Source: Octopus bimaculoides (Eukaryota). Taken from it: a stretch of 64,000 nucleotides of DNA. The notes under the pieces were generated by a model. The model made no database searches and was not told the DNA's origin. It was given only the letters and a program-made list of their open reading frames with translations. This document shows, one piece after another, positions 6,200 to 56,700 of this stretch (positions are counted from its first letter, which is position 1; each line of letters starts with the position of its first letter). The translations under genes were made by a program, and so were the position numbers. Location: assembly GCF_001194135.2 (NCBI RefSeq), contig NC_068984.1, forward strand, positions 132,600,515-132,664,514, in the 5' to 3' direction.

Positions 6200-9100
6200 C
6201 TGGAAAAATAAAACAAAATTGCTATAAAAAATATTTCATCTAAATGGAGGGTGGGGGTTTCTTCTTAATTTTTTTATCAACAAAACAAGAACTGACCTGA
6301 ACAAAGTTTGAGGTAAATAGAGTGCGAAAGTGAGGGAGAACAAGGAAAATGTGCAGGGGACAGGGGGGGAGATAGGAGGGTTGGTTTGAAAGGGAGGATG
6401 CCCAAAACCTGGCAAGATGGTGTGAGGGCGGTTGCCATGGCATTGAGGTAGATCCAGCCTCCCCTATTGACAGGGACAAAACCCATATTTAAAACACTGA
6501 ATGATGATGATGATAGAATACCAAATACTGCAGTATTCACCTTGAGAGATTCTTTCATATATACATATGGTATTAAAAGCACAGACATATATCATTAGCA
6601 AACAAGAAGTGTCTGGCATGAGTTCCAGAACTGCCAGATCATGTGATTTCACCATACTCGCTTCCTCAGTGGTAGGCATCTACCAACCACATACCAGCTA
6701 AATCTCACTGCCAACAATATCTAGAATAACAGTGATTTTTTCAGTCACTGATATTGCAGGCTTATTAAAAAACAAATATTAGTGACAGAAGTAATATTAA
6801 TACCAAATAGCAATCATTATATCTTACTTAATGTGGATGTGTTATTAGAATGCCATATACAGTGATATTTACCTTGAGAGATCCTCTCATGTTTGTGGAG
6901 CTCAATACATATGACAGGCATACTGAGCACCCAGAAGTATACTAGTTGGATCATAGACACAAATCTCATTTAATAAACAAAGTGATCAATATTTAGTAGT
7001 AAAAAATATATAAATTTCAAATGAGAAAAAATTAAAAAATATGCTTACTTCATCCATTCTTCTTTTAAGCAAATTAAGCATTGTTCAATAACTTCATAGC
7101 ATAGATTTGTATTTCTTAGTGCAAGTTCCATACGGATTAATACCTTAGGAGCTGAAAAAGGAAGACAATTCTTATAATTAAATACACGTGATTTATCCAT
7201 GAAATAGAAAAGAAAAAGCAATCAATTACATCAAAAATAATTCAAAACAAACATGCTTATTGTCTTACAAAACTGTTGGACAAGATCTAAGAGGAGAATT
7301 TTCGTGACAATTCTATAAAACAAGACTAAAAGACAGCGTCACCAGGCATACACAAGACGACTGTTAGTGGGGCAGAAGAGATTTACTTTAAGTAATACAT
7401 AGAAAAAGATCAATTCCATATGGATAAGCTGTTAACAACAAACAAGATGAGGACAAATATCCGTCGAATGTAAATAAAGTAATAATAATGTTTAAGTAAA
7501 TATTATTCTTATATAATCAGGCTTGGCAGAAGAGACCGTCTGGATTAAAATTAACCTATAGTAGTGAACACCAGGGACAAAATTAGCTTATGGGAAACCC
7601 AACTTCATGCATAGAACCTGGGATGGTGTTATGAAATATTTTGGGGAAAAAAAAGTCTTATATGCCATCAAATATGGTACATATAAATTGTTTAAAAATG
7701 GAAATTTTTACCTTTATCTGGCAGGATAACATGGCTACTGATTTTGAACTCGTAGCTATTGAGATCTTGTGGTCCCTCTTCAGGACTGAGGATCTCGATT
7801 AAAAGGAACTGTTCTGAGTTTAGAATATGGTTAGGTAACAAAACTCCAAGAGGGACTCCTAAAAAGTTGCAGCGCCAAGATTCTTCATACTTTTCACTGT
7901 AAGGAATTATTTTACAACAGCCTTTCGGTAATAAACCCTGTAGTGAGATAAAGAAATAAATAAAAATGCCATGACGACAGAGAAAAATGATTCAATAAAA
8001 TTTATTTTTAAAAATGGTGTGCATTGAGAGAAATTAAAGAGAATTATGAACGAAAAATAAAAAACAGAATAATTCAACATTAAATCGTTAACAAATTAAT
8101 TACATTGTTACAGGGAAGAATAAACAACAAGCTAGACTCTCTTCTTCCAGATCTAGATTTCATATCCAGTTGTTGGCATTATTGGAAGACAGTTCACTCT
8201 ACCTGTTGAGCCTTCAAACCTAGTTACTTATGTATCATCATCATCGTTTAACATCCGCTTTCCATGCTAGCATGGGTTGGACGATTTGACTGAGGACTGG
8301 CGAACCAGATGGCTGTACCAGGCTCCAATCTGATCTGAGTGCTTCTGGTGTATCATAATGAAGCAAATAACAAGTAATTTTGTATTTATCAAATGTGAGC
8401 ACAGTATCTCATGAAGTTGGGGTTCCCCAGTTGAAGACATCAGCTTTACATGTATTTGAAGCAGGACCCATCTGGTGAAGACACTCTTTTATAAGCTTCA
8501 TTCATAGAACTTCAACTCAATACAAGCTAACACAACACATCACTTATGCATTGATATCAGTTTCTAGTAGTGAGCTACACCTATATATGATGCCTTGTTC
8601 AGATCCCAGATCATCAGTGATCTAGCAGACCTATGAACAAAACCATACCAACCATGACCATCCCATCTTATATTTTAAGACATGATATATCTAGGACTAT
8701 TATCCAATTTGTTCATCATTTTTAAGACAATAGGGTGTGTGTGATTCTAAGGAATTTTGGTAGTTATTTCAAGCAGATCAAGTGACTAACATAGAGGCTC
8801 CCACACTGATTCATCTACATGATGCCCATTGAAAGTACTATGATGTAGTTACATCACAGTGCCAAGATATGAACCACTGACCCTGCAGCTACCAGCCTGT
8901 GAAGCCTATCAATTCAGTCTACTGCAACAGCAATCATTATAATAGAACAGATGAAATAATTTTGGGTAGTAACAAACCTTCAAGACTTCTAACATTGACT
9001 TGACGAGCTGTTTCTCTGTACCCTTGACAATTAATTGGTTCCCTATGACAATATGATGAGCCACCGTGTGAAAGTTTAAATAACCAAGCACCTGTAAAAA

Positions 9101-10525
9101 AAAAACACAATTCATTAGGCCTATAGTTATTTGTTACTCACTACGTTTAGATTACACTTTAGCATTTAAAACTGGCCATATCCAGCCCAAATATTTTACC
9201 TATTTTATGTTCAAACCAGATCCAGCCTCTTACACATCATCATCATCTTCATCATCATCATTTAACATCTGCTTTCCATGCTGACATGGATTGGACGGTT
9301 TGACTGAAGACTGGCGAGCCGGATGGCTGCACCAGGCTCCAATCTGATCGAGCAGAGTTTCTACAGCTGGATGCCCTTCCTAACGCCAACCGTTCCAAGA
9401 GTGAAGTGGGTGCTTTTACATGCCACCAGCACGAGGGGCAGTCAGGTGGTACTGGCAATGGCCACGCTCAAATGGTGTTTTTTATGTGCCACCTGCACAG
9501 GAGCCAGTCTAGTGGCACTGGCAATGACCTCGCTCAAGTATATGGAATGCTGTGAACAACAAATTATAATTTCATTTCAAATACATTTAAATATATTTAA
9601 GATAATTAGTAGGGGAAAAAAAGAACATAATATTGATCTGGTGTGGACAGAGGGGTATAGTAACTTGAGAAATTTAGTATTTTAAAGACAAAAAATTTGA
9701 CAGTACAAAATTACCTGCATAACATTTTGTAAATTATAAAATCTCGGCTGATTTGGGTCGGCATCCATTGAATCAATGTCTGGATTTTCTTTGTCTGGAC
9801 TGGATTTCCTCATGTAGAGTTTTATAAAGCCTTCTTCAGTTTCTAGAAAAATAAAAGGGACAGAATAATTTATTTACACTTTAGAAATGTTCATTCATTG
9901 ATTCACACACAACAGGCTTCTACACAATTTTTGTCTATCAATTTCACTCACAATGCATTGGTCAGCCTGAGGCTATAGTAGAAGATACTTACACATGGGG
10001 TCATGCAGTGAGATTGAACTCAAAGCTACATGCTTGCAAAGCAAGATTCTTAACCACACAGCTAGACCTGCGTCTGTGGTCAGTAATCCATCTTAACCTC
10101 AGTCATTATATATCAAGCATTAATGAGCAAAATAAATTTCGGAAATTATTGTTCATCAAAATTTTGCTTTCTTTATCAAGATTTTATTTTTTTTTAATTC
10201 TTCAACTCACCTTCTAATCTCTCTGTATCCAGAATAGCATCTTCTGTAGGAGGGGCTTCGAGAGAGGTTTCAGTTATTCGGTTAACGCAAGCTTTAAGGA
10301 TCCACACAAATGATACATGTAACATTTTGAAAATATGTTTATCATCTGTTAATTCTTTCAACGATCTAGCTGGCTTGTTACCACCTCGTTGAAACCGGAA
10401 GCTTGCTGGGTAAATACTGTCTCTGTAGCCTTTCTGCGGACATCTTGTCTGTTCTTCAGTGTAGACCTAATAAACAGTAGACCAAAGTAAAAACGATTCA
10501 CTCAACTACTTTGAAAAAGAATGAT

Positions 10526-10698: not shown

Positions 10699-13600
10699 TA
10701 TATATATATATACACACACACACCTTGAAACTTGAGTATGAGGGGGGGGGCTGAAAAGTCCCTGGCTTTAAGAGTAACACGAAAGGGCTGGCTGGAGGCC
10801 TGACCTTCCGACTTCTTTTACAGGGCTTAGAAAAACTGAAGGAATGCTGCAATAACTGCAAATCTGGGAGGGGAATATGTTGAATGAAATCATAATTAAC
10901 TAATCTTCCTGTTTCTTTTTTTTACCCAAAGCCAGGAACTTTTCAGCACTCCCTCCGGTGTATGCACATATGTAGATATGTATGCATGTATGTATATACG
11001 TATGTATGCATGCATGCATTTATTTATTTATGCATATATATGAGGGGATGCTAAAAAGTTCCTGGCTTTAAGGGTACCACAAAAGCCTTATTTGGAGGTC
11101 CAACCTTCCCAGTTCTTTTACAAGCCTTAGAAAAACTGAAGGATTGCTGTAATAAGTGTGTGAATCTGAGAGTGGGATATGTTGAATAGAATCATAATTT
11201 ACTAATTTTCCGGCATTGTCTTTTACCCAAAGCCAGGAACTTTTCAGCACCCCCTCATATATACTCTCACCATTTATCTCTCTCTTTTTCCAGCTGAAAA
11301 AGCCATGTATCTCTTCTATCATACATCGTCCCACTATCATACTTTCATCTCAGTTGAACAGGGCCTTATTTTGAAAGTTACTTGGTGACTTCATTAATGC
11401 TGGTGCCACAACAGAAGCACCCAGTACACCTTGTAAAGTGGTTGGTGTAAGGAAAGGCATCCACCTGTAGAAACCATGTCAAAGCAAAAACCGGAGTTAG
11501 GCACAGCCTTCTGTTTCCCTGGTTCCTGTCAAACCATCGAACCCATACCAGCACAGAAAACAGATGTTAAACAATGATGATATGTATATATACACACATA
11601 CATATAAGCATGAAAAATGCATGTTAAAACAATGACCATGGTATATGTGTGTTGTGAGAGAGAGAGAGAGAGAGAAAGAGGGAGAAAGAGAGCCATTACA
11701 GCTATAGAGTGCTGACACAACAGAGTCTCAAGTTTGGTTCCACTGTGTGGTACCTTGGTCAAGTGTCTTCTACTACAGCCTGGGGTCAACCAAAGCTTAT
11801 GGGTGGATTTGGTAGACGGAAACTTAAAGAAACTTGTCATATATGTATACATGTGTGTGTCTATACCCTTGCCTTGATATCACATAATGGTTGTAAATGA
11901 GCATCACTGTCACACCAGCAATGTTATCTGTTTCCAGTTTTCTGTGAAATGTGTTTGTCCATAGGGAAATATTTCCTTGCTTGGAAACAGATGAAGGTAA
12001 GTGACAGGAAGGGTATCCAGCCATGAAAAAAATCTACCTTAAACAAATTCCATCTGACTCATGCAAACAAAATTAATTAATTCTATATTTAAGAGATGAG
12101 GAATTATGTACATTATTTACATTATTTATATTTGACGGATATTTGTCCTCGTCTTGTTTGTTGTTAGCACAACGTTTCAGCTGATATACCCTCCAGCCTT
12201 CATCAGGTGTCTTGGGGAAATTTTGAACCTGGGTTCTCATTCCTAAGATATTTTTTGATGTTATTATTATTATTATTATTATTATTATCATCATTAAGGT
12301 CAGTGCCTGGAATCAAACTCGGAATCTTGGGGTTAGTAGCCCACGCTCTTAACCACTATGCCATATGTTGAATGAAATCATACGCCATATGGTGTAGTGG
12401 TTAAGAGCATGGGCTATTAATCCCAAAATTCCGAGTTTGATTCCAGGCAGTGACCTCAATAATAATAATAATAATATCAAAAAATACTTTAAGAATGAGA
12501 GGTTCGAAATTTCCCCAAGAAACCTGATGAAGGCTGGAGGGTATATCAACCGAAACGTTAACAACAAACAAGATGAGGACAAATATCCGTCAAATATAAA
12601 TAATGAAAAATAATTGGGTATTACATCATGATGATCTCTGTCTCAAAACACAGGGCGAATTATTTCAATAAATATCAACAATGTTAGCTTATTTTCATTT
12701 TTTTTCTCCCGTTCCACTTAAACTTCTTCAACAGAAAAAGAAGAATTACACACAAGTTACCTTTTCTGCTTTCATTTGTAGTTGCTTGATAACAAGTTGT
12801 AAATTTGGTACAAGGAAAGACCAAGAGTTCAACAAATATAATTTATCCATCATAACAATGATGATGCTATACCAACGTTTAAATCCACGAGCTTGATTAT
12901 CTTGGATATAGAAAGTGTAACTGAGAACATTGCCTTGTTGTTTATCACCAAAGAAAATAGGACCTTCTCGACCAGGACACACCTGTGGGTTATAAAAAGA
13001 GTAAAAATAGCAATAAAATATGACTAAACAGCTATTAGATATTTTTCTGTTATAGTGTCCATCTCTTACAAGATACTATAATTTATAAAACAGCAATCAG
13101 TTCAGTGTGGCAATAAACCAAGAATAATTCAGAATTATTTTTCCCAAGTATGAACAATTGAGACTAGAGATATTATCTAACCATCGTGTTTTTGGTCTAC
13201 CCCTAGGTCTCTCATCAATCGACTTGGCTTGAGAAATATCTTGCAATTCTTTCTTGTGACATTCTAATCACATGTTCACAGTACCAGAGCTGTGACCTCT
13301 CCATGCAGAGAAATAGCATCTCCCTGATCTCTGAGCTATGCACTCTTAAGTAACGTTATTCTAGAGATCCTTTGGAGTAGGAGCTCTCAACCACTTTTTA
13401 TCTATGGACCCCTTTGATTACTATTTTATTCTGGTGGACCCCTATACCCATTCAATGTTTAAAAGTTAGTTTTATAGAAAATTCTTTGAAAATTCCTATT
13501 TTGCTTTTCACACATTAATTTGTGTAAGTTGAACTAAATAAATGCTAGAGAAAGAAACTTGTTTCTTGAAATGCATACAAAAACACACATCTAAAGCAAA

Positions 13601-19758: not shown

Positions 19759-20331
19759 CCTCTCTCTAAACTGAATGAAAGTAATTTTCTTATCTGTATT
19801 ACAAATGTATTTCGTAGAAAGTTAAGGAATTATCTTCGGTCTGTGTTATTTATTCACTTTTCTTCGAACATTCTTTATCCTAGTTTCTTTGGAAAACCAT
19901 TTACTTTCTTATTAATGACTTAATTGCGGTATCCTATAATATTTTCACTTTCTTTTACATTATTTTCCTACTTCATTTCTGCCACTTTATTAGTATGTGC
20001 TATGGACTGAACCGTGAAGTCAAATCGGACAACCTGTGGCCTCCGTCAAACATCTGCCTGCGTACACAAAGTTTTCCTAGTCTTTAATAAAGAGCAGTCT
20101 ATTTATTGTCATCCTCTGAGATTCACTTTTTCCCCGTCATAAATCATTGAACTTGTTACCTATTTAAGCTAGATAGACTCGGCTGATTTGAAAGTTGTGA
20201 AAAAAGTCACTGACACCACAAATAACAAGACATTAATCGCCGACCTCTCGACTGGATGTCTGATGAGCTACTTGTGTTCCCTCTCCATCCGATAGGTTTC
20301 TGCATAGTTTCCATTTAACAANNNNNNNNNN

Positions 20332-29600: not shown

Positions 29601-32600
29601 ATCTTGCCTCCAATTGTAAGTACAAGAAACTTGAAATTATATTTATATACTAGCTGGCCCTGTGCTGTCAAAAATGACAGCTAATTGTAGTATTTTATAT
29701 ATAAATAAGGTACATAATCACAGATACAAACATTCACACACTTCCCTTGTACATGCACACACACATATACTCACAGAGTTGAAACACTGTTTGATTTTTC
29801 TTTTCAGCATTGAAAGTTCACCATCCCACTTCCATTGCACACATGCACACACATTCACATGACTCCCTTTTATATACACACATATATACTCATGCAGAGT
29901 TGAAATGCTGTTTGATTTTTTTTTTTTTACCATTGAACTTCCATCAACCCACTACCAAGTTTGCTATCACCCCTCCCTTCTTTATTCATCTATACCCCCT
30001 TCGTTTCCCATTCATATATTGTGACGGAGAAATACACAAAAGTTATTATTATAGTAGAAGATATGGATGGTAAATCAAATTAATACACTTGTCAGTGTTC
30101 ACATACATTCACATACCTCCCTTGTATATGCACACACGTACATATACTCACACATAGTTGAAATGCTATTTGATTTTTTTTTTCAGCATTGAATGTTCAA
30201 CCATCCTATTTCCATTGCACACACAGACACACACACATTCACTTGATGGATGAAGTGACACAAGATCAACAAAAGTAGCAGCCTGACCTATACAAATGAA
30301 AATCGTTTTCATATATTCACATTTTATATATTCCATGTTTCGCCTCTTCCACTAGAACTAATATTTCATCATTGAGCCATATCATCATCATTTAACATGT
30401 TTTCCATGCTGGCATGGGTTGGATGGTTTAACGGGATCTAGTGAGCTGCGGGGCTGCATCAAGCTCAAATGTCAGCTTTGGCATGTTTTCTACAGCTGGA
30501 TGCCCTCCCCAATGCCAGCCACTTTACAGTAAGTACTGGGTGCTTTAAGTATACTTGTATATGTATGCTTTTGTATCTATACATCTTGTTTTCAAATTGA
30601 GAGTACAAGTATTTAAGGTCATAACTACTAGAATAGCAAAGTGGAGTTGGACTTGACTGTAAAGGTATTAGACTTCTAATTACATGATTTGTCTTCCAAA
30701 GCTTGATGATGCTGAAAGAGAAGAAATGAGACAATACAGAGATGAAGCTGTCAGACGGATGCAACAACGTAACCAAAGAAAACGGACATTGACAGATACT
30801 TCTGCTTCTGTAAGTAAATTATTTTTAGTATTTATAACAGAATTTTCCTTGTATTCAAATTTTTAATTCTTTGTTGGGATGGATAAAGCCTAACATATTG
30901 CATGAATCTCTATATTGTAAGTGTTTGGGCTGGACATTGTTCTCACCAGTCTATGAGAGTCCAAAAAAGTTGTGCACACTGCCTTTCTTTTAATTAACTT
31001 ACTAAAGGAAAATAGCCTGGTAGATTTATGCATATGGCTGGAGCAGCTAAATAACTGTTACCTCAAATTATCTTCTGTAATTTGTTATCCAATGAAGGCA
31101 CATGGCTCAGTGGTTAGAGCATTGGGCTCACAATCATGAGGTAATGAGATCAATTCTCAGACCAAGCTGTGTGTTGTGTTCTTGAGCAAGACACTTTATT
31201 TCATGTTGCTCTAATTCACTCAGCTGTAGAAATGAGTTGTAATGTCGCTGGTGCCAAGCTGTATCAGCATTTGCCTTTCCCTTGGATAGCATCGGTGGTG
31301 TGAAGAGAGGAGGTTGGTATGCACGGGCAACTGCTGGTCTTCCATAAACAACCTTGCCCAGACTTGTGCCTCAGAGGGGAACTTTCTAGGTGCAATCCCA
31401 TGGTCATTCATGTCCAAAGGGGGTCTTGACCCTTTTAGTTGCCATCCATATTTTCAGCTATTTTATCAATTGAAGCAAATAAATGTATGTGATATGATTT
31501 AAGATGCTAATCATGGATTAACAATATATTTTTAGATTATCACCATCTTATCCAGCCAGCACTCCAAATTTCTTTTATTTTGTTGTATAATCTATTATAA
31601 CTCTGCATTATTTCTTATTGTAATTTATGAATTCATAAGCAAAATCATCACATTTCAGATTAACTCTTCTACTGTTGCTGAGAACATTTCAAATCCTCTT
31701 CTGGAACAAGACAGAACTGCACCATTTCATGACAATATAACAATACCTGGGTGTATACCTGAAGAAGACAAATCTTCAGACAATCTTCCACAGTCTTCAT
31801 CCCCAGAAGAAGAACTTGTTCCCCAACTTTCACATGAACTAATCCCTCCAAAAGATGAAATCTCTTTTCAGGACAATAGAGGACAGACAAATCTAAATTC
31901 ACCTACAGAGAACAGAGAAGAGACAAATTTAAGCTCACCTTCACTCAGATTAAAATATTGTGACAATTTACTGATTACCAGCTCTCTTTCTGACTTGGGC
32001 TCCTTAGAAGAAGGTTCATTACCCACCGAAATGAATGGTATGCCCCTAACTTCCCGATGTGAGCAACAAATTACTAAAGATCTTTCAACTCTTATCAAAC
32101 ATTTACCTGACAACTGTAGTTCTGACAATTCTGACTTTAGTGATTTCGTTTCTGCTTCCAACTTCGATTTAATCTGTGAGTCTCCTGAGCTTGATAAGGA
32201 AATTCCTCCTGTCACTAAATCAGCTTCAGATGAACCAGTAATCTGTTCCTTTCTTTCCAATATGAAACCAAACACAAGTGATTCCCCTCTCCATTTACCA
32301 AATGATACATCCCAAAATGTTCTGAGGGCTCCTATATTTCTCACGGATGAAAATGGTTTGGAATTGCACGCATTGCCAGCTGAAAGCCAAAGTTCGATGC
32401 AAATTAGTGTTAATGAGGGGCAAGGATGGATCATGACCTCTCCTTTGATTGCTTATGTCACCAAGAAACGACCTGAAACAGTAGGCATGTCTTCCAATTC
32501 ATCTCAAAAGCCCATTAAAATCCAACAGGCAGGTAACGCCACCTTTACAATTGACCGCAAAGACGATGGAGAAGAAAGTCACCTTGTTCGGCCTGTAATA

Positions 32601-35488
32601 TCTAGCAATCAAGATTCTTGGGGCGCTAATGTTTGTCAAGCAGACTATAGTAATAACTCCATTTCTCCTAAAGCTAAACTAAACCAGTCCTGTAATAATA
32701 ACAATAATATTAATAATAATAACAACAACAATTCTGTCCAAGTTCATTCTTCAAATCAAGAGCAAATCATTACAAATCATCAGAATACAAATCCTGCTGT
32801 TTTGCCAGCAAATTTGAACACCACATGTAATTCAAGTAAAAGAGACAAGTCTTTCATCGATGCCAGTTTAAATGAACCAAAGTTAGAGGATGATGAACGC
32901 AAAATGCTGTTGCCATTTTTGTCTTCACCACATAATTTATCTCTAAAAGACCATTTCAGTGATGATTCTTTAGACGAACTTTTATTTGGGATTGACAAAA
33001 TTGGATTCGTTCCACGGAAGGATGGTGATGGCAGCGACTTGAAGGATTTAAGCAATCCAGTCAAAACAGGTGCTATCAATAAGAAATGTAATTCTAAGCA
33101 GCCAACTAAGACACAAGTAAGTTTTTATATTATTTATTTACTCTTTTACTTTTGGTTCTACAAAAAAATACACCCAGGAAAGTGGTTGGTGTTAGAAATG
33201 GCATCCAGCTGAAGAAACCATGCCAAAACTTGAGACATGTGATTTGTCTAGGAAGGCAGTAACTCCATATAAATTCTGACTCACACTGGCAGACAGTCAC
33301 AGAAATAATGATTAGGGGGATGATTTGGTAGTATTATTATATTGATACAATTTTGGCTCAAGACCTGTGATTTTGAAGAGAGTGGTCAGTTCATTTCTTC
33401 AACCCCTTTACTCAACTGATACTTATTTCATTACCCAGAAAGAGTGAAAAGCAAAGTTGATCTTGGAGGCATTTCGACTCAGAACATAGAGGGCTGGAAG
33501 AAATGCTACTAAGCATTTTGTCTGGTGTATGAATGATTCTGCCAGCTTACCATCTGATATAATATTAATATATAAGGCAGCAAGCTGGACAAAATACTTA
33601 GGAACATTTCATCTGTCTTCATGTTCCGAGTTCAAATTCCACCGAGGTCAACTTTTCTTTTCCTCCTTTCAGAGTCATTAAAATAAGTACTGGTCTTATA
33701 TTGGGATTGATAAAATCAATTAGCCACCCGCCCCCAACAAAATTTCAGGCCTTGTGCCTATAGTGGAAAGGATTATTATATTAATATATCAGTTAAGGTA
33801 GCAAGCTGGCAGTATCGTTAGCACGCTGGGCGAAATGCTTAGCAGTATTTTGTCTGCCACTACGTTCTGGGTTCAAATTCCGCTAAGGTCGACTTTGCCT
33901 TTCATCCTTTCAGGGTTGATGAAATAAGTACCAGTTACGTACTGGGTCAATGTAATCGACTAATCCTCTCTCCTCAAATTTCAGTCCTTGTGCCTGTAGT
34001 AGAAAGGATATTAATATATCATCATCATCATCATCATCGTTTAACGTCCGCTTTCCATGCTAGCATGGGTTGGACGATTTGACTGAGGACTGGTGAAACC
34101 GGATGGCAACACCAGGCTCCAATCTAATTTGGCAGAGTTTCTACAGCTGGATGCCCTTCCTAACGCCAACCACTCAGAGAGTGTAGTGGGTGCTTTTACG
34201 TGTCACCCGCACGAAAATGGCCACGCTCGAAATGGTGTCTTTTATGTGCCACCCGCACAAGAGCCAGTCCAGGGGCACTGGCAACGATCTCGCTCGAAAA
34301 CCCTACAAAGGCCAATCAGCATTCATTATATTAATATCACAATATTCATGTGAAAAATCTATTGTATATTTTTATTTTAATCACTTTCTAGTAAGAGTTC
34401 TGTTATGCTAAGGTGTAATAACATTCATACGTTCATCTCTGAATTATTCCTTTCCAGACCAGTCTCCCTACCAAATCAATTCAAACTAACTTCACTACGG
34501 TAACAACTCATTCTTCTCACAACTTGCCAGTTTCCACTGCTACTGTTACCATGGCTGATATCCCTAATCCATCAGAGGTATGCAGTCTTGCAGAGATCTC
34601 TGCTTCAGATTCCACAGCCAATCATTTAAATCCAGCAGAAAAGAAAATAGCCATAACTAGTCCAAGCCTAATTCCAAAGTATTGTAGTGATTCGTTAATT
34701 CGCCGGGGCTCGTATACCCTTGGAGAGCCATCAGTTGATTTAAGAAAATACTTAAACAATTCAATCCACAATTCCCATGAAGATAAAGATGCTGACAATA
34801 ACAGCAGTTGTTCAGATTCTGACAAAATCCCTACTTATGAAGATTTTGAAACTCAACTTCTGAAGAAAAATTCTGAAAATGTCAGCCCATTACCTATCAG
34901 AGTTGAAATAGACAGCTTTAAATCAGAACAGCAATCTACAAGACAAAACGAGGTTAAAAACACAAGTAGTAATTCTATCCAACATTCTTCCCCTGTTACA
35001 AAAGAGAAAATTCCCAGAAACTCAATTTTGGAAAATATTCCATTATCAGCAGCTTCATGCCAAAGTGAATACAGCCCATTAAATACTTCAAGAAAAAAAT
35101 CTCCAATCAAGAAAAAAGAAGACAAATGCAACATGAATACTTCTGCATTAAATCATACACAAAATGGTTTGGAAACTTCAGCTTTCAAAGGTAACATTCA
35201 CTTTAAGTTTTTAAAGATTTTTTGTTTGTTTTTGTTTACAATTTGTTTACATAGGCACAGGAGTGGCTGTGTGGTAAGTAGCTTGCTTACCAACCACATG
35301 GTTCTGGGTTCAGTCCCACTGCGTGGCACCTTGGGCAAGTGTCTTCTACTATAGCCTCAGGCCGACCAANNNNNNNNNNNNNNNNNNNNNNNNNNNNNNN
35401 NNNNNNNNNNNNNNNNNNNNNNNNNNNNNNNNNNNNNNNNNNNNNNNNNNNNNNNNNNNNNNNNNNCGTCATATATATGTATGTGTGT

Positions 35489-36241: not shown

Positions 36242-36678
36242 NNNNNNNNNNNNNNNNNNNNNNNNNNNNNNNNNNNNNNNNNNNNNNNNNNNNNNNNNNN
36301 NNNNNNNNNNNNNNNNNNNNNNNNNNNNNNNNNNNNNNNNNNNNNNNNNNNNNNNNNNNNNNNNNNNNNNNNNNNNNNNNNNNNNNNNNNNNNNNNNNNN
36401 NNNNNNNNNNNNNNNNNNNNNNNNNNNNNNNNNNNNNNNNNNNNNNNNNNNNNNNNNNNNNNNNNNNNNNNNNNNNNNNNNNNNNNNNNNNNNNNNNNNN
36501 NNNNNNNNNNNNNNNNNNNNNNNNNNNNNNNNNNNNNNNNNNNNNNNNNNNNNNNNNNNNNNNNNNNNNNNNNNNNNNNNNNNNNNNNNNNNNNNNNNNN
36601 NNNNNNNNNNNNNNNNNNNNNNNNNNNNNNNNNNNNNNNNNNNNNNNNNNNNNNNNNNNNNNNNNNNNNNNNNNNNNN

Positions 36679-36711
<33 letters not shown>

Positions 36712-38832
36712 CTATATATATATATATGTATCTATATATATGTATCAGTGCCACCGAACTGGCTCCTGTGCAGGTGGCACGTAAAATACACCATTTTGAG
36801 CATGGTTGTTGCCAGTACCGCCTGACTGGCCTTCGTCGGTAAAAGCACTCACTACACTCTCAGAGTGGTTGGCATTAGGAAGGGCATCCAGCTGTAGAAA
36901 CTCTGCTAAATCAGATTGGAGCCTGGTGTAGCCAACTGGTTTCACNNNNNNNNNNATCAGATTGGAGCCTGGTGTAGCCAACTGGTTTCACCAGTCCTCA
37001 GTCAAATCGTCCAACCCATGCTAGCATGGAAAGCGGACGTTAAACAACGATGATGATGATCTATATACACATACACACACACACAACAGGCTTCTTTCAG
37101 TTTCCATCTGCCAAATCCACTTGCAACGCTTTGGTTAGCTCAAGTATATAGTAGAAGGTGTCATGCAGTAGGACTGAAACCACAACCATGTGGCTGGGAA
37201 ACAAGCTTGTAGCGTACTTCTCTCTCGGACGTAGCAGATAACAGCTAGCCTTCGGCTGCATCTTTGGTCCCTGTTGTGTCCACCACTCTGATTGGTTGGT
37301 ATTGGTGCATTTTTGTCTCTTGTTCTATTTTGCGCCAGATAGATTTAGCTGCTATTGCTAGCAGTTCAATCAACTGCATATAGGCTCTATTGTTGCGTTG
37401 AGTTTCAAATATTATTTCTGTGGGGAGACACAGTAAACAATCTAACAGCATAACTCCCTCTCTCTTTTGTGAAGTTATGCTGGATTATTTCAGAAAGATT
37501 TTGTTTTTTTTTAAATCTCTATAAAATGTGTTTTGAGAAATGTTATATCAAGCAAAAAAAAAAAAAATTATTAAACTTGTATCATTTCAGCTTCTAACTC
37601 GCCAGGCCAGTCTGCTGTTCTTACAAGCAATGAGCTGTTTGACTGGGAAGACATGTTTGAAGATGAGTTGAGATCATTTTTCAGTGAAAAAAGACAATCA
37701 TTTATGAAGATGCAGCAACAATTTAGAGAATATGAAGAACAATTTGAAGAGGAGTACCAGAGAACTCTTGACAGCATGAAGAAATCTCAACGTTGGCCAA
37801 AAGAATTCACACCTGACATGAATATTTTCATTCCTAAAACAGACATGACTGGCAATCCAACTGAGGAGCAAGCATTGTTGAATTACCAACACACTCCTGA
37901 ATCTACCACTTCACAACGAAAATCATATAAACTTATTAAGGTATGTCTTTAATTTTAATCAATCAATAATTTTACGTGTGGAGGCACATAGCCTAGTGGT
38001 TAGAGCAGCAGACTCGTGGTCAAGGGATCACAGGTTCGAATCTCAGTCCTGGTGATGTGTGTGTTTATGAGTGAAACACTTAAGCTTCACGCAACTCCAG
38101 CAGAAGATAATGGCAAACTTTTGTTGACTCTTTCGCCAAACCTTCTTGCCTATATCCAAAAGGAAACCATCAAGCATATTGGTAATTACTCACAATTAAA
38201 CTACAATCACAGATGTGTCACATCTCACCTCGTACATGAAGCCCCTTTTTCTACTCCTCTATTTGTCATTTCCTGTGACCCTTCACCAAACACGTTACCC
38301 AACTGTTTCACCTAAGAACTGCAACCTTTTGGGATTCCTCTCCAGTTCACATTTTTCTGCAGGCACTGACAAACAGGTGTTCCAACTGAACATCAATTAT
38401 ATCATCTTATGAGACCCTACAGGCACCAGGGGTTCTGACCCACTTCCCCCAGCTAATTAATAAAATAAACTCATAATTTTGTTCTGGTTTCAAATCCTGC
38501 AGGGGTTAACTTTAGCTTTCATCTTCCTAGGTTTGATAAAGCACCTGTAGAGTATTGGGAATCACCCTGACTGAGTATACCGTTTTTCCTATGACTTCCA
38601 GGCCTTGTGCTAATATGAGAAATCATCATCATTATTATTGTGGTGGTGAGCTAGCAGAATCATTAGTACATTGGACAAACATACTTGGCAGCATTTCTTC
38701 TGACTCATTCAAATTCTGCCAAGGTTCACTTTGCCTTTCATCCTTTTGGAGTCAATAAAATAAGTACCACTTGAGTCTGGGGGTCAATGTAATTAACTCT
38801 CTGCCCCTAAAAATTTGCTGTCCTTGTGCCAA

Positions 38833-44249: not shown

Positions 44250-44928
44250 CTCTGACTGGTTGGCGTTAGGAAGGACATCCAGCTGTAGAAACTCTGCCAA
44301 ATTTAGATTGGAGCCTGGTGTTGCCGTCCGGTTTCACCAGTCCTCAGTCAAANNNNNNNNNNTGTTGCCGTCCGGTTTCACCAGTCCTCAGTCAAATCAT
44401 CCAACCCATGCTAGCATGGAAAGCGGACGTTAAACGATGATGATGATGATGTTATATACATATACACAACAGGTGTCTTTCAGTTTCTTTCTACCAAATC
44501 CACTCACAATGCTTTGGTTGACCCAAGGCTATAATAGAAGACATTTTCCCCAAGGTACCACGCTGTGGGACTGGACTCGGAATCATGTGGTTGGGAAGCA
44601 AGCTTCTTGCCACACAGCCACTCCTGCAGTTACGAAATTATTTCAGTTTATTTCTAATATTTACTTTAAAATTAAATCAGTTGGTGAGATTATGGTTGAA
44701 AATGCAGTTCTGAATGTACTTTGTTGTTTCATGTTAAGTCTTAACATCATCATCATTTAACATGCACTTTTCCATGCCTGCATGGATCACATGGAATTTG
44801 CTGAGGCAGATTTTCTACAGCTGAATGCCCTTTCTGTTGTAAAATACCTGTGGAAAACTTCTATACTGTTTGAGAAATTACTGATAATATGGTAAGTATT
44901 ACATCCTAGAATTAAAAAATATATATTG

Positions 44929-50757: not shown

Positions 50758-53700
50758 CTGGTGAAATAATTAAAAAGGAAAAAGAAAACATTTAGTATCT
50801 TTTGTATTTCCCTGTGGCTATGTGGTAAGAAGCTTGCTTCCCAACCATATAGTTCCAGGTTCAGTCTCACTGCATGGTACCTTGGGCAAGTGTCTTCTAC
50901 TGTAACTTTAGGCCGACCAAAGCCTTGTGAGTGGATTTAGTAGACAAACTGAAAGAAACCTGTCATATATGTATATATCTGTGCGTGAGGCAAGACCTTC
51001 GAACATTGGGCCTCACCGAGGCGATGACTACTGACCGAGACCTTTGGAAATGTGCTGTGCGTGAGAAGACCCGGCAAGCCAAGTGAGATCGTTGCCGGTG
51101 CCCCTGGACTGGCTCTTGTGCGGGTGGCACATAAGATGTACCATCCTGAGCGTGACCGTTGCCAGTACCGCCTGACTGGCCTTGTAGGGTTTTCGAGCGA
51201 GATCGTTGCCAGTGCCCCTGGACTGGCTCTTGTGTGGGTGGCACATAAAAGACACCATTTCGAGCGTGGCCGTTTTCGTGCGGGTGACACGTAAAAGCAC
51301 CCACTACACTCTCTGAGTGGTTGGCGTTAGGAAGGGCATCCAGCTGTAGAAACTCTGCCAAATTAGATTGGAGCCTGGTGTAGCCATCCGGTTGCACCAG
51401 TCCTCAGTCAAATCGTCCAACCCATGCTAGCATGGAAAGCGGACGTTAAACGATGATGATGATGATGTGTGTGTGTGTGTTTGTCATCCTGCCATCACTT
51501 GACAACCGATGCTGGTGTGTTTATGTCCTCATAACTTAACTTAGCAGTCTAACAAAAGAAGAAACAGATAGAATAAGTACTAGGCTTACAAGGAATAAGT
51601 TCTGGGGGGTCAATCTCTTCGACTAAAACAATTTAAGGCAGTCCTCCAGCATGGCTGCAGTCAAATGACTAAAACAAGTAAAAGAATAAGAATACAAGTC
51701 GACATAGTATATAGTGAAAACATGTAAATATCTAAGCTTCATCATCTTTACAAATCCTGCTGCATTTCTTTTTCACTAGTTCATTCTATTTACAGCACTT
51801 GGCACTTTCCTATGCAACTGTCATCCTTCAAACATATCAAACACAAAAGGAAAAAGTTGGTGTTACTTACCAGTTATCGAATTGTTTTCTGCATTCAGGT
51901 TTACTAGCTTCGGTAATCTGTAGACAGCATTTGGTATACAAGTGAAGCTATTGAAGGATATATCTAGAGACTGGAGATTTGATAAGTCTTGTATCTCATC
52001 TGGGAGGCTACTGAATTTGTTTTTCTTGAGACATAATTCTGTTGAGGAAAGGAATTTTTTTTTTTTTAATCAGAAAATATTTCTTTCTTCATTAAACAAA
52101 AACGGTTCGTGGGAAAGTGAATAAGATTCTGAAATCCCAACCACCACCACCACCACCTAACTGATCAGAGCTTTGCCAGTTCAATGTTGATTACTTCCAG
52201 CAGCAAATGTGTTTCACCATTGATCCATCTGAAAGACCTAACCAAGTAGCCAAAATCATCCTGCCAGGCATGTAACTTCAAATCCCTCACAGAATCAAAA
52301 TCTTTAACCCTCAAATCCCCTAAGCAGTTGTCCCATAACAATTGAATACTATCTTTAACACCTTAAGGAAGTCACCCACTACCACAATTCAGAGGCTTTT
52401 ATCCACTACTGCAATACATGCAAGAAAATTACCATTAAAAAAAAAGCAAGATGATATGGCCTTCAAGCTCTCCTGCCTCCCAAAGTAAAGCAACTTTATG
52501 GAATCCTCTTACTCGCCCATGCATACCAGCCTCCCCTCTCTACGCCACCAGTATTATCCAAGGGAAAGGCAATGGCCGATAGAGCTTGGCACCTGTGACG
52601 TCGCAACTCATTTCTACAGCTGAGTGAACTGGAGCAATGTGAAATAAAGTTTCTTGCTCAAGAACACAACACACAGCCCGGTCCGGGATTCGAACTCACA
52701 ACCTCACGATCGTAAGCTCGTCGCTCTAACCACTGAGCCATGTGCCTTCACTCCTACTGAAATGGTAAGAGTTGTTAAGAATTACTGCCATCACATTGAG
52801 TCCTCTATTGTACATACCAGTATAGTTTCCTTAAATTCAGATCTACAGGAGACTTGCCTGTTTATGTCATTCCCCAACATAACCCTCACTATTGATGAAA
52901 GCATGAGAACCACCCACAGTTTCCATCAAAAACTCATTTCGTTGATGGGAAGTTTTCTAACACAGTTCCAAAGATTCTTCAGAGAAATCCCATTTTGGGA
53001 TCAATAGAAATATTAAGCTTCACAGGCTCTGATGACCTCTCAATTCAACACCCATATATATACTGTCAAACTTGCATCCCAAAGAATAAAATTCTTAATT
53101 AGGATGAGAAAAGATTTCGACTATAATCAGTGTCTGCAGAAAGAAAAATTAGGTAGGGTCCGATTCAAATTTTTGCAAGAGGACCCCAAGATCCAAGTGT
53201 TAAAATAGTTGTACTAAAGTTCAATAGTAATGTTAAGGTATATACTTTTGCTGATTATAGAAGAGAGATGATCAAAAAGAACTGGATTGTACCTGAGATT
53301 CCTGGAAACACCACTCCAAATTTCTTTGGTAGACGTGGAATTTGATTATTAGTGAGAACTAGACTCTCAACACAAACATTCTTCATTAAAAAATATACTG
53401 CTTCAGGTATTTGGATTAATTTACAACCAGACAGATCTGGAAATAAAATAAAATACAATTAATAAGCTTAAAGTCAAATTTGATATGAAAACAAATCTAG
53501 GTTCTAAAGAAACTTGCAATGGTTGACACCAGTAAACACACAGTTAATAAAATTTTCAATAAAATTTTACTGTAGCCTGCTCTATAGGTGGAATGCTCGG
53601 TGCTTATAGTAAAACACCATTTAATAGCAAGCACTACACATCTGTTGATGGGTGCTACATCACCACTACTAAAATGTATGCACAGGATATGCTGAAAGCC

Positions 53701-56700
53701 TGCATACTTCTTCAAGCACAATAAACACAGATGTTAGAAATAGTAACATTTGGACCTGTTGGATGTAAAATGTGATAAGCTGGTGATGTTGGTGCAGTTT
53801 AAATTCCAGAGGGTTGGAAAGGAAAAATTCTGCAAGATGTTTAGAATGGATCTGAGTGTGCAATTAAAGGAGGAGGAGATTAGGTAGTACACTGCTAGCA
53901 AATTCAAAGGGGCAGAGACTATTGTAGTAGTGATTAGAAAAGACTCTCTCACAAATACAGTACAACTACTAACCCAAAGATAAGCTGATTTTTATGGCTC
54001 TATTTCCTCTAATGCTATCACAACAGCATCTGCTTCTCTAAACAACCAAGCTCTCTTCAAGCCCAATGCACTTACTTCTTTCAGCATTCTTAGTGTGTCT
54101 CACCCTCTAGACTCTACACTGTGAATATTTTGTTCAACCATTTCTTGCAGAATTTCAATTCTCTGGAATGTTCTCCTTGCCTACGTTTTGAATATCAATC
54201 ACATCAATCCCATCATTTGAAGATGGCCTGGAAACCTTGAAAGAGATCTGTAACATTTTTACATCAAGAAATTGAAGCCTTCTTCGGGAGTTAGACATTT
54301 ACATTAGGTTCAGTACTCTACTATTTGAGCTATCTCCACCACCCATACAAAAAAGATATTTTGGGGTTTGTTTTTTTAAATTACTAACAGATCAAATATT
54401 TTGATATTGGGCAGTCCTCTTTTGATAGTAATTTGTATTAATAACTAGCAGAAATACCCGGCGTTGCCCGGGTTAAAGAGAATAATGAAATCTAAAAACG
54501 CCGTCTAGACTACGCATCATCTTTATATATAGAGATGTATATACACACACGCACCCAAACACACGTATATATATGTATATCAATATAAATATATGAAAGT
54601 CAATGAAGTTTCGTAAAAGAAGGTGATCATGTACATACTTTCTTGCTGTTGTGATTATAACACCTCATTGTAAACTATGTTCCTTGTTTTCCCTTGTGGA
54701 GCATATACAAATAGGTTTTTTGTTGCTGCCCACTCTTGAGCAGCCAACATACAGTTGTCCATGTGAGAAGCAGGGCTCTTCCAAGAGAAGACCNNNNNNN
54801 NNNNNNNNNNNNNNNNNNNNNNNNNNNNNNNNNNNNNNNNNNNNNNNNNNNNNNNNNNNNNNNNNNNNNNNNNNNNNNNNNNNNNNNNNNNNNNNNNNNN
54901 NNNNNNNNNNNNNNNNNNNNNNNNNNNNNNNNNNNNNNNNNNNNNNNNNNNNNNNNNNNNNNNNNNNNNNNNNNNNNNNNNNNNNNNNNNNNNNNNNNNN
55001 NNNNNNNNNNNNNNNNNNNNNNNNNNNNNNNNNNNNNNNNNNNNNNNNNNNNNNNNNNNNNNNNNNNNNNNNNNNNNNNNNNNNNNNNNNNNNNNNNNNN
55101 NNNNNNNNNNNNNNNNNNNNNNNNNNNNNNNNNNNNNNNNNNNNNNNNNNNNNNNNNNNNNNNNNNNNNNNNNNNNNNNNNNNNNNNNNNNNNNNNNNNN
55201 NNNNNNNNNNNNNNNNNNNNNNNNNNNNNNNNNNNNNNNNNNNNNNNNNNNNNNNNNNNNNNNNNNNNNNNNNNNNNNNNNNNNNNNNNNNNNNNNNNNN
55301 NNNNNNNNNNNNNNNNNNNNNNNNNNNNNNNNNNNNNNNNNNNNNNNNNNNNNNNNNNNNNNNNNNNNNNNNNNNNNNNNNNNNNNNNNNNNNNNNNNNN
55401 GTATCGAAATGGTGTACATATACATGTATATGTATACATATACACCTCTCTCCCTCTCTCTTTCTGTCTCTCTCTTTCTCTCTTTCTCTCTCTGTGAAAG
55501 TATTTGACACGAGTGTTTTTGTTTCACTTTTGACACGTAATACTTAAATAGTGGAGGAGATATTATGTTGCCGTGTGCTCGAACTCTGCAAGAAGTTAAT
55601 AATTTTATTTGACTAAAACACAACTGGAACCCTAAGTAAGGCATGTGTAAAATTTGAATGAAATTGGTTGCGTAGTTCTCGAGTTTTAGGGATTCACACA
55701 GACAGACAGACAGACAGACAGACACACATTCTCATTTTTATATATATAGATGACTCAAATAATTTCTTGGTAAAAGAAAAAATTCCTGCTCCATTTTAGA
55801 TGCTTAAGCATCAAATCAGTCCTAATCGAGCAAAAACTTCTGGTGATGTCCATCCCGTTTCAAAAGCTTCTAATGATGTCTGTCCCGTTTTATTAAGAAA
55901 ATCTAGGTCTACATTATTCGATACGGCCTACCTTAAAATGATAAGGGTGTGATTTAACAGACATTTGGTCGCTATTTCTAGCACGTGAAGCAACAACTTT
56001 GAGGCTCTCTCGTTAACTTGTTTCTACTATATATACTGTGGCGATATGATTTCTAGTAATTTTACTGTTTGCATAGCAGACGTAAACCTCTGCTAATGAA
56101 ATTCGTTCTAAAATTAATACTAAATAAATTATACATTTCAAAATTTCCCTTTGACTAGGCATATAATATTTTTATTTATTTTGATTGATAGAATTAGCCG
56201 CCAGAAGGTCGACTCGACGAGAATCGAACGAACACAACCTGCGGGACTGAAGAAATAAAACATTCAAAGGGTTTTCCTTTACCAGCTACAGCCACCAAGA
56301 CACAACTCAACATAATAATATACAGCAAAAGGAAAGGACAAATGAATTAAAATTCAAAAGTAAAATAACTTCTCAAATTTGAAGCTTTGGCAGACTGCTT
56401 ACTTTAATCAGGGCCTTTTTTTTTTTTTTTTTTTCGTGGCTCGTCTAACCTATAATCTATTTTGAAAAGCACCAAATTATTTTATTTTTACTTTTTAATA
56501 GTTTAGTCAGAGAAAGGGCATATTCTGTGAAGTTTTTTCGTGGTTTCCGAGACTGGAAGGAAGAAGGGAGGAAGTTATCCTCATACCCGGGAGATCGAAA
56601 TGCTTGCAAAACCGTGGACTTCGCTAAAGGTGATAAAGGGTGACGATAGACTAAATTCATAACCTAAAAAATGGAATAGTCCCTCTGATGGACTTCCACA

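What the first reader, a model, noticed from the sequence alone, without database searches (positions are those of the whole stretch)
12166..12211. Minimal hammerhead-ribozyme motif in the sense strand of FLCN intron 3
Seen: the minus strand reads GACAC CUGAUGA A GGCUG gaggguauau CAGCU GAAA C GUU^ GUGCU. That gives the CUGAnGA and GAAA core, a 5-pair stem II (one G-U) with one extra A, stem I (GACAC/GUGCU, one mismatch) and a loopless palindromic ACGU helix III ending in a GUU triplet. Known: Penelope-like elements carry minimal hammerheads with palindromic helix III that cleave as dimers. Inferred: the FLCN pre-mRNA carries a potentially self-cleaving motif. The plus-strand copy (12519-12564) has lost GTGTT and has a stem II mismatch, so it is probably dead.
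Basis: partly seen in the sequence, partly recalled or inferred. Interest (0 to 1): 0.7.

Follow-up and report, generated by a model that had tools for sequence, protein, structure and literature searches.

The report
Decayed retroelement hammerhead motif in intron
The hammerhead-ribozyme motif is really there, but it is a decaying relic carried near the tail of a short tRNA-headed retroelement. Two copies of that element sit head-to-head in a folliculin (FLCN) intron, so this is an ordinary kind of animal repeat and is very unlikely to cut the FLCN transcript.

Summary
**Observation:** confirmed. The minus strand 12211→12166 reads GACAC-CUGAUGA-A-GGCUG…CAGCU-GAAA-CGUU-GUGCU. This is a complete Penelope-type minimal type-I hammerhead. 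A descriptor finds it once in the window, against 0.003 expected per shuffle. The site lies in FLCN coding intron 3, on the sense strand.

**What it is:**
- It is not a free-standing feature. It and the plus-strand copy lie ~60 nt from the outer ends of a ~500-bp inverted repeat (12103-12616), with 2 nt between the arms.
- The arms are 90% identical.
- Each arm is a SINE-like unit: a tRNA-type A/B-box head, (AAT)n, a body, the min-HHR and an A/T-rich tail.
- Head-to-head inverted copies with hammerheads on opposite strands are a published signature of Penelope-like element (PLE) insertions.
- A third copy (7429-7491) holds only the tail. It starts within 3 nt of the predicted cleavage site.

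**Function here:** unlikely.
- Rfam hammerhead models do not match.
- A CpG→TpG change made the 10.1-11.1 pair G·U.
- Helix I has only 3 Watson-Crick pairs.
- The hammerhead fold is not the energy minimum.
- In the pre-mRNA the motif is buried in a ~250-bp hairpin (−339 kcal/mol).
- Only one sense copy is present, yet the motif needs a dimer.

**Limit:** family-wide covariation could not be tested, because no other copies were reachable.

**Verdict:** a new member of a known kind, of low to moderate interest.

The parts
12166..12211 (-). Complete minimal type-I hammerhead motif: helix I 5' strand, CUGAUGA, bulged A, helix II, GAAA, palindromic ACGU, U17 and helix I 3' strand. The predicted cut is after U at 12171.
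   Evidence: one descriptor hit against 0.0033 expected per shuffle
12519..12564 (+). Degenerate second copy of the motif. The core is intact and the 10.1-11.1 pair is G-C. Helix II has a C·A mismatch, and there is no helix I 3' strand because GTGCT is absent.
12103..12376 (-). Minus-strand arm: a full SINE-like unit with its 5' head at the centre of the repeat and its 3' tail pointing outward.
12377..12616 (+). Plus-strand arm: the same unit, head-to-head with the first. It is 90% identical over 234 aligned bases, with three indels.
12309..12363 (-). tRNA-type internal Pol III promoter region. Box A (TGGCATAGTGG) is a perfect match to TRGCNNAGTGG. Box B is AGTTTGATTCC. The two boxes start 44 nt apart.
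   Evidence: pattern found in 0 of 300 shuffles; weak Rfam tRNA hit of 11.9 bits at 12306-12363; ARAGORN finds no tRNA
12390..12444 (+). The same A/B-box head in the plus arm.
12259..12297 (-). Internal (AAT)n microsatellite of the minus arm. It is 18 nt longer than in the plus arm, where it lies at 12458-12477.
7429..7491 (+). Third copy, 5'-truncated, holding only the ~60-nt tail downstream of the hammerhead. Homology begins at GTT|AACAAC, within 3 nt of the predicted cleavage site.
12761..12982 (-). Context: FLCN coding exon 3. Its GT donor is 145 nt upstream of the repeat in the transcript.
10212..10466 (-). Context: FLCN coding exon 4, which marks the end of intron 3.

Best explanation
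The motif is a neutrally decaying relic of a Penelope-like-element (PLE) type minimal hammerhead. It sits about 60 nt from the 3' end of a short non-autonomous retroelement.

**The unit (~250 nt), in order:**
- a tRNA-derived Pol III promoter head;
- an (AAT)n microsatellite;
- a body;
- the min-HHR;
- an A/T-rich tail.

**Inferred history:**
- The 3' part, including the hammerhead, was probably borrowed from a partner PLE's terminal (pLTR) region. That is where the PLE reverse transcriptase/endonuclease would act.
- One integration event produced two head-to-head inverted copies. This is the 'inverted copy at the 5' end' structure typical of PLE insertions.
- The insertion landed in FLCN intron 3. 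The arms have since diverged by about 10%.

**In the source element (inferred):** pairs of such motifs can form a double hammerhead through the palindromic ACGU and cleave after GUU. That cut would separate the promoter head from the tail. The tail-only copy at 7429-7491 fits this.

**At this locus:** the motif does nothing catalytic. It is mutated, single in the sense orientation, and locked in a long intronic RNA hairpin.

**Shown:** the sequence anatomy, the inverted repeat, the A/B boxes, the fold energies and the exon map.
**Inferred:** PLE mobilisation, a single-event origin and past cleavage activity.
For: **The motif and the published PLE min-HHR hallmarks (PMC4209133):**
- The motif is present and improbable by chance in this window.
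- There is an extra A between A9 and G10.1.
- Positions 15.2-16.2 are a palindromic C-G.
- Helix II has 6 bp and helix I is short.
- A second motif lies 353 bp away on the opposite strand.
- The two arms differ as CAGCU|G and CAACC|G. The U/C difference sits at a CpG, which implies an ancestral CAGCC. That gives a perfect helix II with G10.1-C11.1.
- With that single base restored, predicted helix II probability rises from 0.2 to 0.88 and helix I from 0.15 to 0.47.

**The repeat:**
- It is a 494-514 bp inverted repeat with 2 nt between the arms.
- The arms show 23 mismatches in 234 aligned bases (16 transitions) plus three indels. This rules out an assembly artefact.
- Divergence in the hammerhead segment is 3 substitutions plus one indel in ~46 nt. 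That is no lower than in the rest, so there is no sign of constraint.

**Retroelement character:**
- A/B boxes at tRNA spacing occur in both arms and in 0 of 300 shuffles.
- Neither arm has a TTTT run in its sense strand, against 2-3 in the antisense.
- A 5'-truncated tail-only copy exists.
- Craig et al. 2021 (PMC8557442) report that PLE insertions often carry an inverted 5'-truncated copy adjacent at the 5' end, and that hammerheads lie near the 3' ends in pLTRs.
- The intron has no room for a PLE ORF and contains none.

**Inactivity at this locus:**; no Rfam hammerhead hit even at E ≤ 10.
Against: - No other family members could be retrieved, so there is no family consensus and no covariation test.
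- It is unknown whether the family as a whole has helix I. GTGCT is present in one copy. It is absent from the plus arm. In the tail-only copy, MAFFT also places a gap there, but that copy's homology begins at this point, so its state is uncertain.
- No partner PLE with a matching 3' end was found.
- No target-site duplication could be recognised.
- The tRNA relationship rests on the promoter boxes alone: ARAGORN finds nothing, and the Rfam tRNA model gives 11.9 bits against a gathering score of 29.
- The single-event origin of the inverted dimer is inferred only from the 2-nt junction. Two nested insertions are not excluded.
- The position of the tail-only copy's 5' end is a single observation (about 3% by chance).
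Confidence: 0.72

Rival explanations
1. One reading: the motif is a working, or conditionally working, ribozyme. It would cleave FLCN pre-mRNA after GUU, as a dimer with another transcript, and so affect FLCN expression.
For: - The complete core and all three helices can be drawn on the sense strand.
- PLE-type motifs are reported to cleave as dimers (PMC4209133; Lünse et al. 2017 as cited in PMC6765202).
Against: - The transcript holds only one sense copy.
- The motif is sequestered in a ~250-bp hairpin (−339 kcal/mol).
- The hammerhead folds are 4 kcal/mol (monomer) and 25 kcal/mol (dimer) worse than the alternatives.
- The 10.1-11.1 pair is G·U, helix I has 3 bp, and the triplet is GUU.
- Min-HHRs show low activity in vitro even as consensus dimers (PMC4209133).
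- The arm shows no conservation signal relative to its twin.
- About 43% of retrozyme-homologous copies (monomers and tandems together) lie in introns in Xenopus (bioRxiv 10.64898/2026.07.22.740005). An intronic location is therefore unremarkable.
Confidence: 0.04
2. The hammerhead likeness is coincidental. On this view the ~500-bp palindrome is a foldback or MITE-type DNA transposon, or a local inverted duplication, with no relationship to PLEs or ribozymes.
For: - Structurally it is a long terminal-inverted-repeat element.
- No Rfam hammerhead match.
- No family consensus is available.
- Genome-wide, chance descriptor hits are expected. This is an extrapolation.
Against: - Several independent features not required by the descriptor coincide: the bulged A, the palindromic 15.2/16.2, the inferred ancestral G10.1-C11.1, and the position near a 3' tail.
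- Pol III A/B boxes point outward from the centre in both arms.
- The sense strands are free of T4 runs.
- A tail-only truncated copy fits retroposition better than cut-and-paste.
- No target-site duplication of a DNA-transposon type was seen.
Confidence: 0.12
3. The inverted pair has been co-opted as an intronic double-stranded RNA element. It would be a substrate for A-to-I editing, or a modulator of exon 3/4 splicing or back-splicing, like inverted Alu pairs in primates. The hammerhead would be irrelevant. This does not exclude the best explanation.
For: A very stable hairpin begins 145 nt downstream of the exon 3 donor.
Against: - There is no comparative or expression evidence.
- The arms have drifted apart by 10% with three indels, as expected for neutral sequence.
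- The nearest available FLCN loci from other species have a ~640-bp intron 3 with no such repeat.
Confidence: 0.07

Closest known systems
Minimal type-I hammerheads of Penelope-like elements (min-HHR; Cervera & de la Peña 2014, PMC4209133; Lünse, Weinberg & Breaker 2017)
   Same: - CUGANGA and GAAA boxes.
- No helix III beyond the palindromic A15.1-C15.2-G16.2-U16.1, which implies a dimeric active form.
- An unpaired nucleotide between A9 and G10.1.
- A long helix II (6 bp) and a short helix I.
- Dispersed copies, mostly outside full PLEs.
- Pairs on opposite strands 100-700 bp apart.
   Different: - There is no PLE ORF or pLTR nearby. The motif is attached to a tRNA-type Pol III head.
- In this copy the 10.1-11.1 pair is G·U and helix I has only 3 Watson-Crick pairs.
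- Family covariation is untested.
Smα / Sjα SINE-like retroposons of schistosomes (Ferbeyre et al. 1998; Laha et al. 2000; summarised in PMC6765202 and PMC8490949)
   Same: A short non-coding element with a Pol III promoter upstream and a type-I hammerhead downstream. In both, cleavage would separate the promoter from the 3' part.
   Different: - Smα carries a canonical hammerhead with a helix III loop and loop-loop contacts. It is active in vitro and often occurs in tandem.
- Here the motif is the loopless minimal type and the copies are inverted, not tandem.
- Sequence similarity was not tested because no Smα sequence was at hand.
Metazoan non-LTR retrozymes (Cervera & de la Peña 2020; PMC7761336; bioRxiv 10.64898/2026.07.22.740005)
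   Same: Non-autonomous, hammerhead-bearing, 150-400 nt units thought to derive from PLE pLTRs and to depend on them. Their homologous copies are commonly found in introns.
   Different: - Retrozymes are head-to-tail tandem repeats and yield circular RNAs.
- They are reported to lack their own promoter (PMC7761336).
- This element is an inverted pair with A/B boxes.
PLE insertion architecture with an inverted 5'-truncated copy (Craig et al. 2021, PMC8557442)
   Same: A head-to-head inverted arrangement with the 3' ends, and their hammerheads, pointing outward.
   Different: Here both arms appear full-length and symmetric to within 2 nt, rather than one arm being truncated. No autonomous element is involved.

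Membership tests
Hammerhead ribozyme (any type) | Conserved core: C3 U4 G5 A6 N7 G8 A9 … G12 A13 A14, with A15.1-U16.1 and H17 | tested here: met
   CUGAUGA, GAAA, an A…U pair and U17 are present in both copies.
Hammerhead ribozyme (any type) | Three helices around the core, with the G10.1-C11.1 pair | tested here: inconclusive
   - Helix II has 6 bp.
- Helix I has 3 Watson-Crick pairs, then a mismatch, then G·U.
- Helix III can form only between two molecules.
- The 10.1-11.1 pair is G·U in the minus copy and G-C in the plus copy.
Hammerhead ribozyme (any type) | Match to a curated covariance model (Rfam Hammerhead_1, _3, _II, HH9, HH10) | tested here: not met
   No hit at gathering score over the whole window. 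No hit at E ≤ 10 in 11900-12800. This is expected for a motif without a helix III hairpin.
Hammerhead ribozyme (any type) | Self-cleavage after H17 | not testable with these tools
   Only thermodynamic predictions are available. The hammerhead folds are disfavoured.
PLE-type minimal hammerhead (min-HHR) | No helix III loop, and palindromic 15.2-16.2 | tested here: met
   GAAA-C-G-U-U gives the ACGU palindrome.
PLE-type minimal hammerhead (min-HHR) | An unpaired nucleotide between A9 and G10.1 | tested here: met
   An extra A at 12199 and at 12531.
PLE-type minimal hammerhead (min-HHR) | Consensus families in the genome with compensatory changes in helices I and II | not testable with these tools
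   No further copies were found in any reachable collection.
PLE-type minimal hammerhead (min-HHR) | Location in a PLE pLTR, or in a fragment derived from one | tested here: inconclusive
   No PLE ORF is nearby. The inverted head-to-head arrangement and the near-3'-end position fit PLE insertions.
tRNA-derived SINE | Internal Pol III promoter: box A and box B at tRNA spacing | tested here: met
   Found in both arms and in 0 of 300 shuffles.
tRNA-derived SINE | Recognisable tRNA-like cloverleaf | tested here: not met
   ARAGORN finds nothing. Rfam tRNA gives 11.9 bits against a gathering score of 29.
tRNA-derived SINE | Dispersed copies with 5' truncation, a repetitive 3' tail and target-site duplications | tested here: inconclusive
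   There is one truncated tail copy and the tail is A/T-rich. No target-site duplication was recognised.
Non-LTR retrozyme | Head-to-tail tandem units, each with a hammerhead | tested here: not met
   The two copies are inverted, and there is no direct repeat of the unit.
MITE / foldback DNA transposon | Terminal inverted repeats flanked by a fixed-length target-site duplication | tested here: inconclusive
   Inverted arms are present. No flanking duplication could be seen by eye at 12090-12105 and 12610-12640.

The most novel reading that the evidence does not exclude
This could be an undescribed family of Pol III-driven, tRNA-headed SINEs that captured the hammerhead-bearing 3' end of a Penelope-like element. 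On this reading:
- the family is mobilised by PLE machinery;
- it integrates as head-to-head inverted dimers;
- its hammerhead is active in vivo. The tail-only copy at 7429-7491, which starts at the predicted cleavage site, would then be a retro-copy of the cleaved 3' product.

That would be a SINE-PLE partnership parallel to SINE-LINE tail sharing, outside flatworms.
Probability: 0.25. Interest if true: 0.45.

Novelty: new member of a known kind. Interest (0 to 1): 0.25.

Why it matters
As it stands this is an annotation point. A hammerhead 'hit' in a gene's intron is a relic of a repeat, not a regulatory ribozyme. Thousands of such minimal motifs are already known in animal genomes.

Two aspects carry modest wider value:
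- The architecture joins a tRNA-type Pol III head to a PLE-type minimal hammerhead tail, integrated as an inverted dimer. If it proves to be family-wide, it would add evidence on how PLEs mobilise non-autonomous passengers and on what their hammerheads do. Both are still open questions (PMC7761336, PMC8557442).
- The inverted pair creates a ~250-bp RNA hairpin 145 nt from an exon. This kind of structure can feed RNA editing or affect splicing.

Tried and rejected
**Searches for further copies of the repeat family.** All failed, so no covariation test was possible.
- A protein search with the open antisense frame of the repeat, hoping for called ORFs on assembled contigs, found no candidates.
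- A 17-mer from the tail scanned against metagenome contigs gave 74 hits. None extends beyond 20-30 nt, so all are chance.
- A 20-mer from the hammerhead scanned against genome and viral contigs gave nothing.
- Sequence strings searched in the literature library gave nothing relevant.

**Orthologous FLCN introns.**
- The closest exon 3 relatives are only 70-72% identical.
- In the one species with a long enough contig, intron 3 is ~640 bp.
- Those contigs carry no related repeat or motif.

**Rfam.**
- There are no hammerhead hits.
- The many microRNA-family hits at 12294-12457 are generic hairpin matches, all below their gathering scores. I rejected them.

**Species.** It could not be identified with these tools. 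The low GC content (35.5%) and the repeat content made me think of a cephalopod, but that is a recollection and was not tested.

**The loose viral scan.** It returned 30 phage contigs with hammerhead-like motifs. These are unrelated to the repeat.

**Assembly artefact.** I rejected this as an explanation of the palindrome, because the arms differ by 10% and by three indels.

**Papers not held.** Lünse et al. 2017 and Ferbeyre et al. 1998 could not be read.
Full report
**1.

Read on the minus strand, 12211→12166 is GACAC CUGAUGA A GGCUG GAGGGUAUAU CAGCU GAAA C GUU GUGCU.

- The 36-nt core-to-triplet string occurs once exactly (12171-12206, minus strand) and once with two mismatches (12524-12559, plus strand). 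It occurs in none of the shuffles.
- I wrote a descriptor for the minimal hammerhead. It requires CUGANGA, a 0-1 nt bulge, helix II of at least 4 bp, GAAA, complementary 15.2/16.2, U16.1, H17 and helix I of at least 3 bp.
- The descriptor hits only this site in the window. The mean over 300 dinucleotide-preserving shuffles is 0.0033 hits.
- That makes the motif improbable in 64 kb. A gigabase genome would still give chance hits, so the context has to carry the argument.

Corrections of detail:
- Helix II can be drawn as 6 pairs, two of them G·U.
- Helix I is 3 Watson-Crick pairs, then A·C, then G·U.
- The plus copy lacks GTGCT, not GTGTT.
- The plus copy retains the canonical G10.1-C11.1 pair. 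The minus copy has G·U there.

**2. The gene context is right**

The minus strand encodes folliculin.
- Exon 1 ([17 protein letters not shown]…) matches PDB folliculin chains at E = 6e-11.
- Coding exons 1-4 lie at 15898-15671, 14080-13943, 12982-12761 and 10466-~10212, all with AG/GT borders.
- The motif is therefore in coding intron 3 (12760-10467), on the sense strand.

**3.

The two motif copies are not independent. They lie near the outer ends of a single inverted repeat spanning about 12103-12616, with only 2 nt between the arms at 12376/12377.
- The arms align over 234 bases with 23 mismatches (16 transitions, 7 transversions).
- They differ by three indels: 18 nt of microsatellite, 5 nt in the body, and the GTGCT.
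- This divergence rules out an assembly artefact.

Each arm, read from the centre outward, consists of:
- a tRNA-type internal promoter. Box A is TGGCATAGTGG or TGGTGTAGTGG and box B is AGTTTGATTCC, and the two boxes start 44 nt apart;
- an (AAT)n run;
- about 60 nt of body;
- the hammerhead;
- an A/T-rich tail of about 60 nt.

Evidence on the head:
- The A/B-box pattern occurs in both arms and in one unrelated SINE at 52686-52740. It occurs in none of 300 shuffles.
- Neither arm has a TTTT run in its sense strand, against 2-3 in the antisense.
- ARAGORN sees no tRNA. The Rfam tRNA model gives only 11.9 bits. The head is therefore tRNA-derived at most.

A third copy at 7429-7491 (plus strand) contains only the tail. 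Its homology starts at GTT|AACAAC, within 3 nt of the predicted cleavage site.

**4. Fit to the known family**

[quoted passage not shown] They list traits that emerged beyond their descriptor:
- a conserved G10.1-C11.1 pair;
- palindromic 15.2-16.2.

For Schistosoma they also report a long helix II, a helix I of 4-5 bp, and pairs of motifs 100-700 bp apart on opposite strands.

The present motif compares as follows:
- It has the extra A.
- It has the C-G palindrome.
- It has a 6-bp helix II and a short helix I.
- It has a partner 353 bp away on the other strand.
- The two arms read CAGCU|G and CAACC|G. The U/C difference sits at a CpG, so the ancestor was most simply CAGCC. That gives a perfect helix II with G10.1-C11.1.
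- Restoring that single base raises the predicted probability of helix II from 0.2 to 0.88 and of helix I from 0.15 to 0.47.

Craig et al. (PMC8557442) describe PLE insertions as often carrying an inverted 5'-truncated copy adjacent at the 5' end, with hammerheads near the 3' ends. That is the geometry seen here. The intron is 2.3 kb and holds no long ORF, so the element is non-autonomous.

**5. Most likely mechanism**

My reading is a SINE-like passenger. Its 3' region, hammerhead included, derives from a PLE terminus and is recognised by PLE reverse transcriptase/endonuclease. It integrated once as a head-to-head dimer and has decayed since. These steps are inferred.
- Divergence inside the ~46-nt hammerhead segment is 3 substitutions plus one indel. 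That is no lower than the 9.8% seen overall. There is no sign of constraint since insertion.
- In a source element, two motifs could pair through ACGU and cut after GUU.
- Because the promoter lies upstream of the cut, cleavage would yield a promoter-less 3' fragment. The tail-only copy at 7429 is what a retro-copy of that fragment would look like.
- That copy is a single case. By chance its 5' end would fall this close to the site about 3% of the time.

**6. Why it is unlikely to act on FLCN RNA**
- The 551-nt intron segment folds into one hairpin of about 250 bp at −339 kcal/mol. Shuffles average −112 kcal/mol, giving z = −36.8. In this fold the motif is paired with the antisense of the other arm.
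- The transcript holds only one sense copy, although the loopless type needs two.
- In isolation the hammerhead fold scores −6.4 kcal/mol against an MFE of −10.7.
- The double hammerhead scores −9.7 against a dimer MFE of −34.5.
- The dimer minimum is driven by the palindrome UCAGCUGA, which the CpG decay itself created.
- Rfam's five hammerhead models do not match, even at E ≤ 10.
- Published min-HHRs cleave weakly in vitro even as consensus dimers (PMC4209133).
- In Xenopus about 43% of retrozyme-homologous sequences lie in introns. An intronic relic is therefore commonplace.

**7. Limits**
- I could not obtain other family members. all failed.
- The nearest FLCN loci from other species lack the repeat.
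- There is therefore no consensus and no covariation test.
- The polarity of the GTGCT indel, and hence whether the family has helix I at all, is open. I lean 60:40 towards GTGCT being ancestral.
- No partner PLE was found and no target-site duplication was recognised.
- The species was not identified.

**8. Verdict**

This is a real motif of a known kind, and it is a decayed copy in an ordinary repeat. The architecture (a tRNA head, a PLE-type minimal hammerhead and an inverted dimer) is closest to schistosome Smα elements and to PLE-derived retrozymes, without being either. It deserves a family-level look in the source genome. As a finding about FLCN it is of low interest.

Noticed in passing
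L001-L030 (IMG/VR contigs), e.g. L013:4418-4450: - Thirty phage contigs carry CUGAUGA-U-GGCUG…CAGCC-GAAAC followed by a real helix III hairpin and GUC. They look like complete hammerheads and have the same extra nucleotide after A9.
- Five of them share loop-2 sequence (GGAGGGAUACC) with the window motif (GGAGGGUAUAUC).
- Rfam misses the motifs at gathering score in the eight loci I scanned.
- In L013, Hammerhead_II scores only 16 bits.
   Followed up: partly
window 7429-7491 (+): A tail-only copy of the repeat whose 5' end falls within 3 nt of the predicted hammerhead cleavage site. It could be a retro-copy of a cleaved RNA, or a coincidence (about 3%).
   Followed up: partly
window 12103-12616 (transcribed minus strand): The inverted pair would form a ~250-bp RNA hairpin (−339 kcal/mol) starting 145 nt after the exon 3 splice donor. 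Structures of this kind can be edited by ADAR or can influence splicing.
   Followed up: partly
window 52686-52740 (-): Another tRNA-derived SINE head with canonical A and B boxes (TGGCTCAGTGG … GAGTTCGAATCC). It is unrelated in sequence to the hammerhead-bearing repeat.
   Followed up: no
window 11035-11263: - A MITE-like element with 35-nt terminal inverted repeats that are 94% complementary.
- A 20-nt stretch inside it (11177-11196) matches the centre of the big inverted repeat (12363-12382) at 18 of 20 positions. I estimate about 0.1 such matches by chance, so this is probably coincidence.
   Followed up: partly
window 31536-33209 (+) and 34443-35351 (+): Two long open frames (558 and 303 aa, rich in Ser and Asn). 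They are presumably large exons of a neighbouring gene on the opposite strand to FLCN.
   Followed up: no
window 20322-20331, 35370-35466, 36242-36678, 36946-36955, 44353-44362, 54794-55400: Runs of N (assembly gaps), several of them flanked by TA/CA microsatellites. The window comes from a draft-quality, repeat-rich assembly with 35.5% GC.
   Followed up: no
window 12179-12184 (-): One CpG→TpG transition (CAGCC→CAGCU) changes the 10.1-11.1 pair to G·U. It also creates the palindrome UCAGCUGA, which dominates the predicted dimer fold. This shows how a single neutral change can disable a small ribozyme.
   Followed up: yes
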